Positions 35,313-40,689 of a stretch of DNA of 64,000 bases are shown in pieces. The stretch lies in IMG/VR virus record IMGVR_UViG_3300024308_000302, positions 1-64,000 of that record, one strand, 5' to 3'. The stretch's first letter is position 1, and the number at the start of each line of letters is the position of its first letter. Both the position numbers and the translations under genes were made by a program. The notes under the pieces were generated by a model. The model worked only from the letters and a program-made list of their open reading frames with translations, ran no database searches and was not told the DNA's origin.

Positions 35313-35389
35313 TGGCGTCTGTGGCAGGACTCGAACCTGCGACCATCCGCTTAGAAGGCGGATGCTCTATCCAACTGAGCTACACACGG
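35313..35389 (-). tRNA. tRNA-Arg: tRNA-Arg(TCT) with unpaired acceptor-stem positions 1-3
   Basis: D, anticodon and T arms essentially as in the 36621 copy; 5' CCGTGTG vs 3' CACAGAC. Confidence 0.75.
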
Positions 35390-35399
35390 ATAAAGAAAA

Positions 35400-35477
35400 G
35401 GGTGCTCTTGGTAAGGATTTGAACCTACGACTTGTGGGTTTCCGCCCACAAACTCTACCAGACTGAGTTACAAGAGC
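35400..35477 (-). pseudogene. aberrant tRNA-like element (8-nt anticodon loop GCGGAAAC, bulged T stem, ends ACCC)
   Basis: 7-bp acceptor stem GCTCTTG/CAAGAGC, D arm and TTCAAAT loop intact. Confidence 0.65.
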
Positions 35478-38962: not shown

Positions 38963-39559
38963 TTAAGCAGCAAGTAATTCTTTTCTTCGTATTCCACAAG
39001 CAATTGCATTATCGATTGCTTGAGACTTGTAAGTCTCTAAATCATATATTTTATACATTTCATGAAAGTTTAAATAACACATTTGATAACAAGGATAAAA
39101 TGTAACTCGAAGATCATTTCCACAAATAAAGTTAATATAAGTTAGTAAATCGTCAAGTACAGAAGTAAAGCAATATTCAAAGGAAATTTCAGTAGATTGA
39201 ATAGTATTTAAATAATCCTTATTATGAAGATGATAAGAATGACTTTTACAAAGAGAAAGAATGTGATTTTCAAGAGACATAGCACGAAGCTTTGAAATAT
39301 CAGGATCTTTTGTGATAATTTTGAATAGATGAACAAAATTAATATTACTATCTTTAAATTTTTGTTTTAGAGCAGAAACTCTGCTACCGAAAGTAGAAGA
39401 ATGACCTATTTTAATAACACCATTTTTGAGACGCAATACATAAACAAAGTGAATATAATCTTTAGTGTTTCCATCCATTTCTTTAGAATGCATACGTCTT
39501 GGATCAACACAAGAATAGTTAGAAATAAAGAGTTTAGATCTGCGATGAAAAGCATACAT
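38963..39559 (-). CDS. GIY-YIG/T5orf172-like nuclease-domain protein
   Basis: FVYVLRLKNGVIKIGHS...R...L and a downstream E..IL. Confidence 0.6.
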   Translation of the reverse strand: MYAFHRRSKLFISNYSCVDPRRMHSKEMDGNTKDYIHFVYVLRLKNGVIKIGHSSTFGSRVSALKQKFKDSNINFVHLFKIITKDPDISKLRAMSLENHILSLCKSHSYHLHNKDYLNTIQSTEISFEYCFTSVLDDLLTYINFICGNDLRVTFYPCYQMCYLNFHEMYKIYDLETYKSQAIDNAIACGIRRKELLAA

Positions 39560-39659
39560 AAATATAAAATCTCATTTTTCAAGTTTAATAATTATATCAA
39601 AAATAAGCTCAATGGTAAAGCAAAAACAATAAAAAAACCACCCGAAGGTGGTTTGTGTT

Positions 39660-39826
39660 TGGTAGCTGTTGATGGGGTCGAACCACCAAGTTAGGACTAT
39701 TTCACAAGCTTCAGAGTACGTGCAATCTCGTCCGACAAGTTATTTCATCTTCACTCCGCTTCCACATCCACGGCTCTTGGTGTCTGCACGTATGACACCT
39801 CCTTCCGATCCAGTTTAGCAACAGCC
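39660..39826 (-). ncRNA. 167-nt tRNA-like RNA (acceptor stem, T arm, CCA) with internal pseudoknot, SD and short ORF
   Basis: GGCTGTT/AACAGCT-A-CCA; GGTGG-TTCGACC-CCATC; GGTGTC/GACACC and TACGTGCA/TGCACGTA. Confidence 0.8.
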
Positions 39827-39840
39827 ATAAATCTTAAATA

Positions 39841-39924
39841 TGGTGCGGAAAGCGGGACTCGAACCCGCACGCCTTGCGACACTGGCTTCTAAGACCAGCA
39901 CGTCTACCATTTCGTCACTTCCGC
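39841..39924 (-). tRNA. tRNA-Leu: tRNA-Leu(TAG)
   Basis: cloverleaf with long variable arm and CCA. Confidence 0.95.
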
Positions 39925-39931
39925 ATAAAAT

Positions 39932-40045
39932 CAAAGTGGTCTACTCTATTTATTTTAGCACCGAGTAGTATTCCATACTTTCAAGCTATATTGGCAACCG
40001 AAGCTGTTATTCCAAAACAAACCACTTGAAAGAAGTGCTAAGTTA
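39932..40045 (-). ncRNA. candidate structured leader RNA (pseudoknot plus cUUCGg hairpin)
   Basis: two crossing 7-bp helices; CAGC-TTCG-GTTG; AGTAT-GGA-ATACT. Confidence 0.45.
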
Positions 40046-40142
40046 TTGCTGCAAGATTTTGTATCTCCGTTTCGTCTTGTGGGCCTATTATAGTGTAATG
40101 CAAGGTAACCGTCAAGCTTTTTTACTTCTTTTAGAACAAATT

Positions 40143-40227
40143 TGGTGCCCAAAGTCGGACTCGAACCGACACTCCTTTCGGAAGCGGATTTTGAATCCGC
40201 CGCGTCTACCAATTTCACCATATGGGC
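40143..40227 (-). tRNA. tRNA-Leu: tRNA-Leu(CAA)
   Basis: cloverleaf with CCA. Confidence 0.95.
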
Positions 40228-40440
40228 TTGTTTAGTGGCTGGCCCGCGTCACCGCCTCCACCCGTAGACTTTAGCGTCTACCCTTTATGCGTTGCAGTAT
40301 ATCAAAGTTAGAGGTTCTGTACAAGCCTTTTTACCAACTTTTCAAAACTTTTTTGTCACTCAACTACATAACTACTTGCTGCATTATTGAAGTCACATTC
40401 TACTGCCAACTCATGTGATAATCAACCTTTTTTTGAAATA

Positions 40441-40623
40441 TTATTCTGCATCACGATCTTGGCAAGCTGATTTATAACCACGATTCCAGCTATACTGAAG
40501 CATGATATTGACAGCTTCCAACTGTTCAGGTGTAAAGCCTACAGTAGATGGGGCATTCGTGTTATTGGGATCTGCTGCATCTTCCATAATTTCACGAACA
40601 TCATCATGAATGTAGCCAGCCAT
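40441..40623 (-). CDS. small acidic protein
   Basis: start at MAGYIH (GAGG SD). Confidence 0.65.
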   Translation of the reverse strand: MAGYIHDDVREIMEDAADPNNTNAPSTVGFTPEQLEAVNIMLQYSWNRGYKSACQDRDAE

Positions 40624-40689
40624 GGTAAACCTCATCGTTTGTGTATAGCGTTTATATTAACAAATATCTAATTTGAAAACAAGAAAAAA

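What the first reader, a model, noticed from the sequence alone, without database searches (positions are those of the whole stretch)
39660..39826. Miniature tmRNA-like RNA: tRNA ends wrapped around a pseudoknot, perfect SD and 12-codon ORF
Seen in sequence: a 7-bp acceptor stem (G1.U72, G2-C71, C3-G70), discriminator A, encoded CCA and a canonical T arm (TTCGA loop), but no anticodon arm. The roughly 130-nt interior has a D-loop-like CTGG, the SD AAGGAGGTG (39796-39804) and a 6-bp stem GGTGTC/GACACC whose loop (TACGTGCA) pairs 8 bp with TGCACGTA downstream (pseudoknot or switch). It also holds the ORF GTG CAG ACA CCA AGA GCC GTG GAT GTG GAA GCG GAG TGA (39751-39789, again starting fMet-Gln) and 7 GGA motifs. 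Established knowledge: tmRNA has this layout but is about 350 nt with G3.U70, and T4 encodes CCA-ended non-tRNA species I/II in its tRNA cluster. Inference: possible roles are a tRNA decoy for anticodon nucleases or tRNA sensors, a CsrA/RsmA sponge stabilised by tRNA-like ends, or an SD-gated ribosome-binding RNA.
Basis: partly seen in the sequence, partly recalled or inferred. Interest (0 to 1): 0.85.

Follow-up and report, generated by a model that had tools for sequence, protein, structure and literature searches.

The report
Kissing-arm tRNA-like phage RNA
A 167-nt non-coding RNA at the end of a phage tRNA-Leu operon has real tRNA ends, but its body is two long arms tied together by a loop-loop "kiss"; phage T4's unexplained "species 1" RNA has the same design, and this RNA is not a miniature tmRNA.

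Summary
The element (minus strand, 39826..39660) is real. It has a 7-bp acceptor stem, a canonical T arm, discriminator A and an encoded CCA. It lies 14 nt after tRNA-Leu and just before an intrinsic terminator. ARAGORN (with introns and in tmRNA mode) and Rfam 15 find nothing there. I recovered five further distinct homologues from metagenomes. They support a cloverleaf-type four-way junction: acceptor stem, 62-nt arm I, 69-nt arm II and T arm. The two terminal loops pair over 6-8 bp. Of 50 pairs, 97.7% of cells pair, and 7 pairs show compensatory double changes, one of them in the kiss. A GGAGG Shine-Dalgarno (SD) is present in only 2 of 6 homologues. The 12-codon frame shows no coding signature and loses its stop in one homologue. 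Only 2 of 7 GGA motifs are conserved, and C3-G70 is invariant, so there is no alanine identity. The tmRNA, translated-ORF and CsrA-sponge readings are therefore not supported. The closest known thing is T4 species 1 RNA (rnaC). I show rnaC has the same architecture, including a covariation-supported kiss, but no detectable sequence homology. Best reading: a natural tRNA-scaffolded structured RNA, processed like a tRNA, whose locked arms are the working part. Its partner is unknown.

The parts
40087..40115 (-). sigma-70-type promoter (TTGACG-17-TATAAT, 11 of 12) of the tRNA-Leu(UAG)/element transcription unit
   Evidence: sequence
39925..40086 (-). about 160-nt leader between the promoter and tRNA-Leu(UAG). 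It is specific to the window: in the homologues the element follows tRNA-Leu(CAA) directly.
   Evidence: its fold is not better than shuffles
39841..39924 (-). tRNA-Leu (anticodon UAG) with encoded CCA, co-transcribed upstream partner
39827..39840 (-). 14-nt spacer. The predicted RNase P cut is at its 3' end, before G1 of the element.
   Evidence: the same spacer is present in the homologues; the cleavage itself is inferred
39660..39826 (-). the 167-nt tRNA-like RNA (whole element)
39820..39826 (-). acceptor stem, 5' strand (RNA 1-7)
   Evidence: pairs with 39664-39670; invariant in 6 homologues
39758..39819 (-). arm I (RNA 8-69). Helices: 8-10/67-69, 13-14/62-63, 20-23/53-56 and 28-33/43-48. 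It also has a symmetric UGGAU x UGGAU internal loop (15-19 / 57-61).
   Evidence: double changes at 9/68, 23/53 and 33/43
39785..39793 (-). terminal loop of arm I (RNA 34-42); positions 36-41 form the kiss
39688..39756 (-). arm II (RNA 71-139). Helices: 71-74/136-139, 78-80/130-132, 87-93/117-123 and 98-100/111-113. It also has a symmetric GAAAUA x GAAAUA internal loop (81-86 / 124-129).
   Evidence: double changes at 74/136, 88/122 and 91/119
39717..39726 (-). terminal loop of arm II (RNA 101-110); positions 104-109 pair with 36-41 (the kissing helix)
   Evidence: C37-G108 becomes U-A in L030; 100% of cells paired over the 6-bp core
39671..39687 (-). T arm (RNA 140-156): 5-bp stem, loop UUCGAYC
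39660..39670 (-). acceptor stem 3' strand (157-163), discriminator A164, encoded CCA (165-167)
39635..39654 (-). intrinsic terminator (8-bp stem, UUCG loop, U tract), conserved in the homologues

Best explanation
It is a stable non-coding RNA built on a tRNA chassis, in effect a natural 'tRNA scaffold'.

How it is made: it is transcribed as the last gene of a small tRNA-Leu operon. Its acceptor/T-arm minihelix and ACCA end let the host tRNA machinery cut it out. RNase P would cut at G1, and the 3' end would be trimmed to the encoded CCA, giving a discrete 167-nt species.

How it folds: in place of a D arm and an anticodon arm it carries two long irregular arms of 62 and 69 nt. They leave the same four-way junction, and their terminal loops pair with each other over 6-8 bp, closing the body into a rigid ring.

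How it probably works: the most conserved non-helical parts are two internally symmetric loops (UGGAU x UGGAU and GAAAUA x GAAAUA) and the kiss. These are probably the working surface, a docking site for a partner, most likely a protein and possibly a dimer, which the RNA sequesters or organises during infection. It is not translated and does not act like tmRNA.

Shown: the ends, the operon context, the fold, the kiss, and the lack of a coding or SD signal. Inferred: the processing steps, stability, and partner binding.
For: - Ends and context. The acceptor, T arm and ACCA are unique among non-tRNA sequence in the window. The promoter and terminator bracket tRNA-Leu plus the element. Five other lineages have the same arrangement of tRNA-Leu, about 14 nt, element, terminator.
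- Fold. On 6 distinct homologues, 97.7% of cells across 50 pairs are paired. Seven pairs have changes on both sides, against 2.6 +/- 1.2 in shuffles (0 of 500), and sliding the partners gives 0-2. RNAalifold independently found arm I and arm II.
- Kiss. The 6-bp core is 100% paired, and C-G becomes U-A in L030.
- Selection. The element is 80-92% identical between lineages, while the neighbouring conserved gene is only 70-85% identical at the DNA level.
- Not coding, SD or CsrA.
- Same design elsewhere. The T4 rnaC family has an acceptor-like stem, a long arm I, arm II and a T arm, with 23 covarying pairs and a 6-bp arm I-arm II kiss. In phage MY02 that kiss covaries, UUGACG/CGUCAA to UUGGCG/CGCCAA. 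rnaC lacks an encoded CCA, which points to the arms rather than the 3' end as the common working part.
- The engineered tRNA scaffold shows that an acceptor stem plus T and D arms are enough for processing and stability of foreign RNA inserts in E. coli (PMC3753655).
Against: - No partner has been identified, and the neighbouring genes give no clue.
- There are no expression data for this uncultured phage.
- Only 6 sequences at 80-92% identity were available, so each helix rests on one or two substitution events.
- The window's own arm II helix 87-93/117-123 has 3 mismatches.
- The single-sequence MFE is no better than shuffles (z = +0.71). The nested consensus is 5-10 kcal/mol above the MFE before the kiss is counted.
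- The invariant acceptor stem, A73 and CCA would also fit a function at the 3' end.
Confidence: 0.5

Rival explanations
1. tRNA-end decoy. The acceptor/T-arm/CCA half is the working part. It baits or titrates a factor that recognises tRNA 3' ends or the elbow, such as a host defence toxin that modifies or cleaves acceptor ends, a tRNA-processing enzyme or a synthetase. The arms only provide bulk and nuclease resistance.
For: The acceptor stem, A73, CCA, T loop and G16G17 are invariant in all six homologues. G1.U72 is unusual and conserved. The element is always paired with a tRNA. T4's tRNA-region RNAs are dispensable in laboratory hosts (my recollection of the older T4 literature, not checked here), as is usual for host-range or counter-defence functions.
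Against: The architecturally equivalent T4 rnaC has an imperfect acceptor stem and no encoded CCA. Sequence-level conservation of the internal loops and the kiss is not needed for a mere decoy. With about 8% divergence, an invariant 14-nt stem is not statistically remarkable.
Confidence: 0.2
2. Processing punctuation. The tRNA-like element sits between tRNA-Leu and the terminator so that RNase P cleavage frees the tRNA's 3' trailer from the terminator hairpin. The RNA itself has no trans function.
For: It always lies between a tRNA-Leu and the terminator. T4 species 1 RNA is also the last gene before termination (PMC2330249).
Against: A minihelix would be enough for that. Instead, 130 nt of arms, the symmetric loops and the kiss are conserved with covariation. 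In Enterobacter phage CW742 the rnaC homologue lies in the middle of the cluster, between tRNA-Trp and tRNA-Gly.
Confidence: 0.1
3. Miniature tmRNA-like or translated RNA. The RNA is charged, enters ribosomes and/or its SD-led 12-codon frame is translated.
For: The tRNA-like domain, a pseudoknot and an open 12-14-codon frame are retained in all six homologues. A strong SD is present in the window and in L008.
Against: - C3-G70 is invariant, so there is no AlaRS identity pair.
- ARAGORN's tmRNA mode and Rfam RF00023 give no hit.
- GGAGG is absent in 4 of 6 homologues.
- The start codon lies inside the kissing helix, and the frame runs through both arms.
- Variable sites fall 4/3/5 by codon position, and every synonymous change is explained by RNA pairing or by an unpaired position.
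- The stop mutates to CGA in L030.
- The peptide ends in acidic VEAE, unlike a degradation tag.
Confidence: 0.04
4. CsrA/RsmA sponge stabilised by tRNA-like ends.
For: 7 GGA motifs in the window copy.
Against: Only the GGAs at alignment columns 16 and 64 are present in all six homologues. Both lie in internal loops, not in hairpin loops of the A(N)GGA type. No Rsm/Csr family hit at E<=10.
Confidence: 0.03
5. An interrupted or decaying tRNA gene: either intron-containing and spliced to a 76-nt tRNA, or a pseudogene.
For: The perfect tRNA ends. A degenerate tRNA-Arg copy exists elsewhere in the same cluster.
Against: ARAGORN allowing introns up to 300 nt finds nothing. No group I intron or tRNA hit at E<=10. 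Removing either arm leaves no anticodon stem-loop. The interior is under purifying selection with compensatory changes.
Confidence: 0.03

Closest known systems
Phage T4 species 1 RNA (rnaC), the small stable RNA of the T4 tRNA cluster
   Same: - Both are encoded in a phage tRNA cluster and made from the tRNA precursor transcript (PMC2330249).
- Both have an acceptor-type stem closing a four-way junction with a long arm I, an arm II and a canonical T arm.
- In both, the terminal loops of arm I and arm II are complementary over 6 bp, with one compensatory change in each family.
- Neither has an Rfam family, and the function of both is unknown.
   Different: - There is no detectable homology. The element's covariance model hits only tRNAs in the T4 region. 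The rnaC model, with filters off, scores an ordinary tRNA-Arg best (18.9 bits) and does not hit the element.
- The element has a perfect 7-bp acceptor stem and an encoded ACCA. rnaC has a 5-bp stem with a UU/UU mismatch and no CCA.
- The arms are near equal here (62 and 69 nt), against about 70 and 26 nt in rnaC.
- rnaC has a 10-nt A/U linker between its arms; here there is a single nucleotide.
tmRNA (SsrA, RF00023)
   Same: A tRNA-like acceptor/T-arm module without an anticodon arm, a GG-containing D-loop-like stretch after the acceptor stem, a pseudoknotted body, and RNase P-type processing.
   Different: The element has no G3.U70, no long helix made of the 5' and 3' strands, and no conserved tag frame with a resume codon. 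It is 167 nt, against 260-400 nt for bacterial tmRNAs (typical size from my own knowledge, not measured here). Neither ARAGORN nor Rfam recognises it.
Engineered 'tRNA scaffold' RNAs (Ponchon and Dardel; PMC3753655)
   Same: The acceptor stem with T and D elements is kept so that the cell processes and stabilises an unrelated structured RNA placed in the body.
   Different: Here the design is natural. Both the D-arm and the anticodon-arm positions are expanded, and the two inserts interact.
Bacterial Y RNA-like YrlA (tRNA-mimicking module; PMC4201824)
   Same: A non-coding RNA with a T arm and tRNA-like fold fused to another functional module; some are phage-encoded.
   Different: In YrlA the RNA ends form the Ro-binding stem and the tRNA-like part is internal (my recollection of the YrlA literature; only the paper's title and abstract were seen here). 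There was no Rfam hit at E<=10.

Membership tests
tmRNA | tRNA-like domain: acceptor stem, T arm, 3' CCA, no anticodon arm | tested here: met
tmRNA | G3.U70 alanine identity pair | tested here: not met
   C3-G70 in all six homologues
tmRNA | Long helix 2 formed by the strands that leave the tRNA-like domain, enclosing the mRNA-like domain and pseudoknots | tested here: not met
   The body is two separate hairpin arms at a four-way junction
tmRNA | Conserved tag reading frame under coding selection, ending in a stop | tested here: not met
   Variable sites fall 4/3/5 by codon position; the stop is lost in L030; the frame is buried in helices
tmRNA | Recognised by tmRNA models | tested here: not met
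   ARAGORN -m finds nothing; Rfam at E<=10 gives no tmRNA hit
tmRNA | Aminoacylation and SmpB binding | not testable with these tools
   needs biochemistry
tRNA (canonical or intron-containing) | Cloverleaf with a 7-nt anticodon loop on a 5-bp stem, scored by tRNA models | tested here: not met
   ARAGORN with and without introns; RF00005 gives no hit at E<=10. In the element's model only the acceptor, T arm and ACCA align confidently to real tRNAs
T4 species 1 RNA (rnaC) type | Encoded within a phage tRNA cluster, co-transcribed with tRNAs | tested here: met
   PMC2330249 for T4
T4 species 1 RNA (rnaC) type | Acceptor-type stem plus canonical T arm closing a four-way junction with two further arms | tested here: met
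   element; rnaC:
T4 species 1 RNA (rnaC) type | Loop-loop pairing between arm I and arm II | tested here: met
   The element has a 6-bp core with C-G to U-A. rnaC has a 6-bp kiss with A-U to G-C. This feature of rnaC was derived here, not taken from the literature
T4 species 1 RNA (rnaC) type | Sequence or profile homology to rnaC | tested here: not met
   blastn; covariance models in both directions
CsrA/RsmA-sequestering RNAs | Multiple conserved GGA motifs, mostly in hairpin loops | tested here: not met
   2 of 7 conserved, none in a hairpin loop
Group I intron in a tRNA | Intron core (P3-P8) inserted in the anticodon loop | tested here: not met
   No RF00028 hit at E<=10; the interior is about 130 nt and splits into two arms

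The most novel reading that the evidence does not exclude
Kissing-arm tRNA-like RNAs may be a recurrent, previously unrecognised architectural class of phage RNA. T4 species 1 RNA, this family, and perhaps other 'expanded cloverleaf' RNAs in related tRNA clusters would belong to it. The class would have arisen more than once, or be very old, and would carry out one shared task. That task could be neutralising a host factor or defence that recognises tRNA shape or tRNA 3' ends, using the locked arms as a specific protein trap. If so, the 50-year-old question of what T4 species 1 RNA does would have a comparative, testable handle.
Probability: 0.15. Interest if true: 0.8.

Novelty: new variant of a known kind. 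Interest (0 to 1): 0.6.

Why it matters
Phage tRNA clusters are usually annotated as tRNAs plus spacer. This work shows that one such spacer holds a conserved RNA whose fold is supported by covariation and which no tRNA or Rfam tool reports. Its design is tRNA ends plus two arms locked by a kiss. T4 species 1 RNA, present in more than 700 sequenced T4-like genomes, has the same design and still has no function. Two unrelated sequences with the same unusual architecture argue that the architecture itself is selected. They also give concrete, compensatory-mutation-ready targets (the kiss and the symmetric loops) for genetics in T4, where experiments are easy.

Tried and rejected
- Rfam, at gathering scores over the whole window and at E<=10 over 39500-40300, gave only chance-level hits on the element.
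- ARAGORN with introns up to 300 nt, relaxed scores and tmRNA mode found nothing.
- blastn in 'distant' mode against 50,697 phage records matched only the adjacent tRNA-Leu.
- Four exact or degenerate DNA patterns in IMG/VR found only the source contig.
- The first pattern scan of the species-representative genomes found nothing. The second, gapped pattern gave 100 chance hits, none confirmed by nhmmer.
- My first guesses for pairings were 16-19/130-133, 54-57/62-65, the MFE pairing GGAC/GUCC and an isolated 10/136 tertiary pair. I dropped them in favour of the RNAalifold helices 8-10/67-69, 20-23/53-56, 71-74/136-139 and 78-80/130-132, which explain the same variable columns with neighbouring pairs.
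- A second possible mini-ORF (AUG AAA stop, after the GGAGG at 64-68) is not conserved as such: it runs to 12 codons in L030, and the GGAGG is GGAAG in the window and GGAGA in L005.
- A resemblance to the hairpin ribozyme (four-way junction, A/GUC-like motif) was considered. It was rejected because the loops do not match and Rfam gave no hit.
- Neighbouring proteins gave no functional clue from Pfam or PHROGs.
- PA5oct, whose tRNAs are 94.6% identical to some in the window, has no equivalent element in its tRNA cluster. Its four reported ncRNAs lie elsewhere (PMC7318152).

Full report
OBSERVATION

The feature lies on the minus strand, where RNA position p corresponds to window coordinate 39827-p.
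- a 7-bp acceptor stem (1-7/157-163) starting with G1.U72, G2-C71 and C3-G70;
- discriminator A and an encoded CCA;
- a 5-bp T stem with loop UUCGACC;
- CUGG at 14-17;
- AAGGAGGUG at 23-31;
- the hairpin 28-33/43-48, whose loop UACGUGCA is complementary to UGCACGUA at 103-110;
- a GUG-started 12-codon frame at 38-76;
- seven GGA motifs.

The window carries ten tRNA genes on the same strand. None of them overlaps the element.

I ran a strict scan of both strands of the window, requiring 7 of 7 acceptor pairs, a 5-bp T stem, a TTCRANN loop and NCCA. It returned only the tRNAs and this element. The tRNA-like ends are therefore not a chance event.

WHAT IT IS NOT, BY EXISTING TOOLS

- Rfam 15 reports only the tRNAs at gathering scores.
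- At E<=10 over 39500-40300, Rfam places nothing meaningful on the element. There is no tRNA, tmRNA, group I intron, Y-RNA-like or Rsm hit.
- ARAGORN finds nothing there, even when allowed introns up to 300 nt, relaxed thresholds or tmRNA mode.
- The single-sequence MFE is unremarkable: -41.3 kcal/mol, z = +0.71 against shuffles.

CONTEXT

A near-consensus sigma-70 promoter lies at 40115-40087 (11 of 12 matches). It is followed by a leader of about 160 nt, tRNA-Leu(UAG) at 39924-39841 and a 14-nt spacer. Then come the element and an intrinsic terminator at 39654-39635.

All tRNAs of this cluster encode their CCA, so the encoded CCA is the local norm.

The window is part of IMG/VR UViG_3300024308_000302 (290 kb), which was cut out of a 1.54-Mb JGI contig. 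Its gene content is phage-like. Some of its tRNAs are 94.6% identical to those of jumbo phage PA5oct.

HOMOLOGUES

GenBank phages and IMG/VR hold no second copy. I reached relatives through the flanking proteins.
- The downstream 198-aa ORF has 80% and 66% relatives in Logan assemblies.
- The upstream 60-aa protein (MAGYIHDD...) has 28 clusters.
- One metagenome pattern scan added a 678-kb contig.

This gave six distinct copies:
- the window copy;
- L013:3988-4154;
- L008:41-207;
- L018:3332-3498;
- L005:9747-9913;
- L030:2832-2999 (alignment A2).

In every lineage the element follows a tRNA-Leu by 13-14 nt and precedes the same terminator. That tRNA is Leu(CAA) in L005, L013 and L018, where ARAGORN called it, and by its anticodon loop in L030. 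In L008 only the 3' part of the upstream tRNA is on the contig. The window has acquired an extra promoter, leader and tRNA-Leu(UAG) in between.

The copies are 80-92% identical. The adjacent conserved protein gene is only 70-85% identical at the DNA level. The RNA is therefore under at least as much constraint as that gene.

STRUCTURE

RNAalifold on A2 and my own pair bookkeeping converge on a cloverleaf-type four-way junction.
- Acceptor stem: 1-7/157-163.
- Arm I (8-69): helices 8-10/67-69, 13-14/62-63, 20-23/53-56 and 28-33/43-48, with terminal loop 34-42.
- A single junction nucleotide, 70.
- Arm II (71-139): helices 71-74/136-139, 78-80/130-132, 87-93/117-123 and 98-100/111-113, with terminal loop 101-110.
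- T arm: 140-144/152-156.

The two terminal loops pair with each other. The core, 36-41 with 104-109, is paired in all six copies. The flanking pairs 35/110 and 42/103 form in 3 and 5 of the six.

Over the 50 pairs, 97.7% of cells form standard pairs. Seven pairs show changes on both sides, against 2.6 +/- 1.2 after shuffling (0 of 500 shuffles reach the observed value). Sliding the partners by 1-3 columns gives 0-2.

The double changes are spread over arm I (9/68, 23/53, 33/43), arm II (74/136, 88/122, 91/119) and the kiss (C37-G108 to U-A in L030).

By simple counting, a perfect 6-mer complement between two loops of 9 and 10 nt is expected in about 0.5% of cases, and an 8-mer in about 0.01% (my estimate, not a tool result).

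Two internal loops are striking. UGGAU (15-19) faces UGGAU (57-61), and GAAAUA (81-86) faces GAAAUA (124-129). Each reads the same 5' to 3' on both strands, and both are nearly invariant.

Three caveats apply:
- There are only six sequences.
- The window's own helix 87-93/117-123 has three mismatches.
- The nested consensus is 5-10 kcal/mol above the MFE before the kiss is counted.

SD. GGAGG upstream of the GUG occurs only in the window and in L008. The others read GGCGG, GGAAG or UAAGG. The motif overlaps stem 28-33.

ORF.
- The GUG start lies inside the kissing helix.
- The frame stays open, at 12 codons in five copies and 14 in L030, where UGA has become CGA.
- Its 12 variable sites fall 4/3/5 on codon positions 1/2/3.
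- Each of the four purely synonymous changes sits at a base-paired column that changes compatibly with its partner, or at an unpaired column.

There is thus no coding signature.

GGA motifs. Only two of the seven are in all six copies, and neither is in a hairpin loop.

tmRNA. C3-G70 is invariant, so the alanine identity pair of tmRNA is absent, and there is no tmRNA-type helix 2.

COMPARISON WITH T4

In T4 the tRNA cluster ends with species 2 RNA (rnaD) and species 1 RNA (rnaC). The cluster transcript is reported to terminate after the species I gene and to be the precursor of eight tRNAs plus both RNAs (PMC2330249).

rnaC-like sequence is present in 740 phage records, mostly unannotated. It has no Rfam family.

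I aligned six diverse copies (T4, Entb_45, CW742, Kosakonia 305, Klebsiella MY02 and VR7; alignment A4). The consensus is again a four-way junction:
- an acceptor-like stem;
- a long arm I;
- a shorter arm II;
- a canonical T arm.

It has 23 pairs with double changes, against 9.5 +/- 2.2 after shuffling (0 of 500).

The terminal loops of arm I (UUGACG) and arm II (CGUCAA) are complementary in all six copies. In MY02 they change together to UUGGCG and CGCCAA. T4 species 1 RNA therefore shares the defining design of the window element: tRNA-like ends plus two arms locked by a kiss.

There is no detectable homology. Model R1 (the element) hits only tRNAs in the T4 region. Model R2 (rnaC) scores an ordinary tRNA-Arg best (18.9 bits) and misses the element even with filters off.

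The two also differ in detail:
- rnaC has an imperfect 5-bp acceptor stem and no encoded CCA.
- Its arms are unequal.
- In phage CW742 it lies in the middle of the cluster.

MECHANISM

Shown:
- the tRNA-type ends;
- the operon position;
- the fold;
- the kiss;
- selection on the RNA rather than on a peptide.

From established knowledge, RNase P recognises the stacked acceptor/T-arm helix together with an RCCA 3' end. An acceptor stem with T and D elements is also enough to have foreign RNA inserts processed and stabilised in E. coli (tRNA scaffold, PMC3753655).

I therefore infer three things:
- The element is excised and stabilised as a 167-nt RNA by the tRNA machinery.
- The kiss locks the two arms into a rigid body.
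- The invariant symmetric loops are a binding surface for a partner, plausibly a dimeric protein.

rnaC keeps the arms and the kiss but not the CCA. For that reason I put slightly more weight on the arms than on the 3' end as the working part.

The main rival is a decoy for factors that act on tRNA 3' ends or on the elbow. A pure processing-punctuation role, a tmRNA-like or translated role, a CsrA sponge and an interrupted tRNA are progressively less likely, for the reasons given in the rival list.

NOVELTY AND SCORE

The kind of thing is known: a small stable tRNA-like RNA in a phage tRNA cluster. However, this family has no sequence relative, no Rfam model and distinctive features. These are a perfect acceptor stem with ACCA, two near-equal arms and the symmetric loops.

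As far as the searchable literature showed, neither the shared kissing-arm architecture nor the kiss in rnaC itself has been described. The function remains unknown.

I rate the finding as a new variant of a known kind, with interest 0.6.

Noticed in passing
L001:2909-3047 (-) = T4 rnaC; alignment A4: The T4 species 1 RNA family folds as a four-way junction with 23 covarying pairs. It also has a 6-bp kiss between the arm I and arm II loops (UUGACG x CGUCAA), which covaries in Klebsiella phage MY02 (UUGGCG x CGCCAA). rnaC-like sequence is in 740 phage records, nearly always unannotated, and has no Rfam family.
   Followed up: yes
L024:3253-3374 (+) and L015:2254-2376 (+): Two further RNAs of about 122 nt, unrelated in sequence, have an acceptor stem, a canonical T arm and NCCA. 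Their cloverleaf arms are expanded. They sit in the tRNA clusters of related phage contigs. ARAGORN and Rfam tRNA do not call either one. Each is a single sequence, so there was no covariation test.
   Followed up: partly
window 40441-40635 (-): A conserved 60-aa protein (MAGYIHDD...WNRGYKSA) with no Pfam family has at least 28 clusters. It sits directly upstream of a tRNA or tRNA-like operon in every locus examined, including lineages that lack the element.
   Followed up: partly
window 35317-35390 (-) and 35401-35477 (-): One tRNA-Arg(UCU) copy has its top three acceptor pairs broken; Rfam aligns only model positions 4-67. The neighbouring tRNA is called with a 2-nt 'anticodon' by ARAGORN and ends in ACCC rather than ACCA. 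Both are probably decaying duplicates in a cluster with repeated Met, Leu and Arg genes.
   Followed up: partly
window 39925-40142 (-): The window lineage has an insertion between tRNA-Leu(CAA) and the element. It consists of a second strong promoter, a leader of about 160 nt and tRNA-Leu(UAG). In the other lineages where the upstream tRNA could be identified, the element follows tRNA-Leu(CAA) directly.
   Followed up: partly
source contigs: The phage-like region and its relatives sit on very large contigs of 0.68, 1.28, 1.54 and 1.85-1.86 Mb. The IMG/VR entry is a 290-kb piece of the 1.54-Mb contig. I did not examine whether these are jumbo prophages in small genomes, chimeric assemblies or something larger.
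   Followed up: no
window 39635-39654 and 39591-39619 (-): The terminator hairpin also scores as a terminator on the opposite strand, so it may act in both directions. A promoter-like site for the downstream 198-aa ORF follows it immediately.
   Followed up: no
L015:2380-2520 (+): Downstream of the L015 tRNA-like RNA there is a long inverted repeat (UUUAGAGUUCUUAG ... CUAAGGACUCUAAA) enclosing about 110 nt. It may be another structured RNA in the same tRNA cluster.
   Followed up: no
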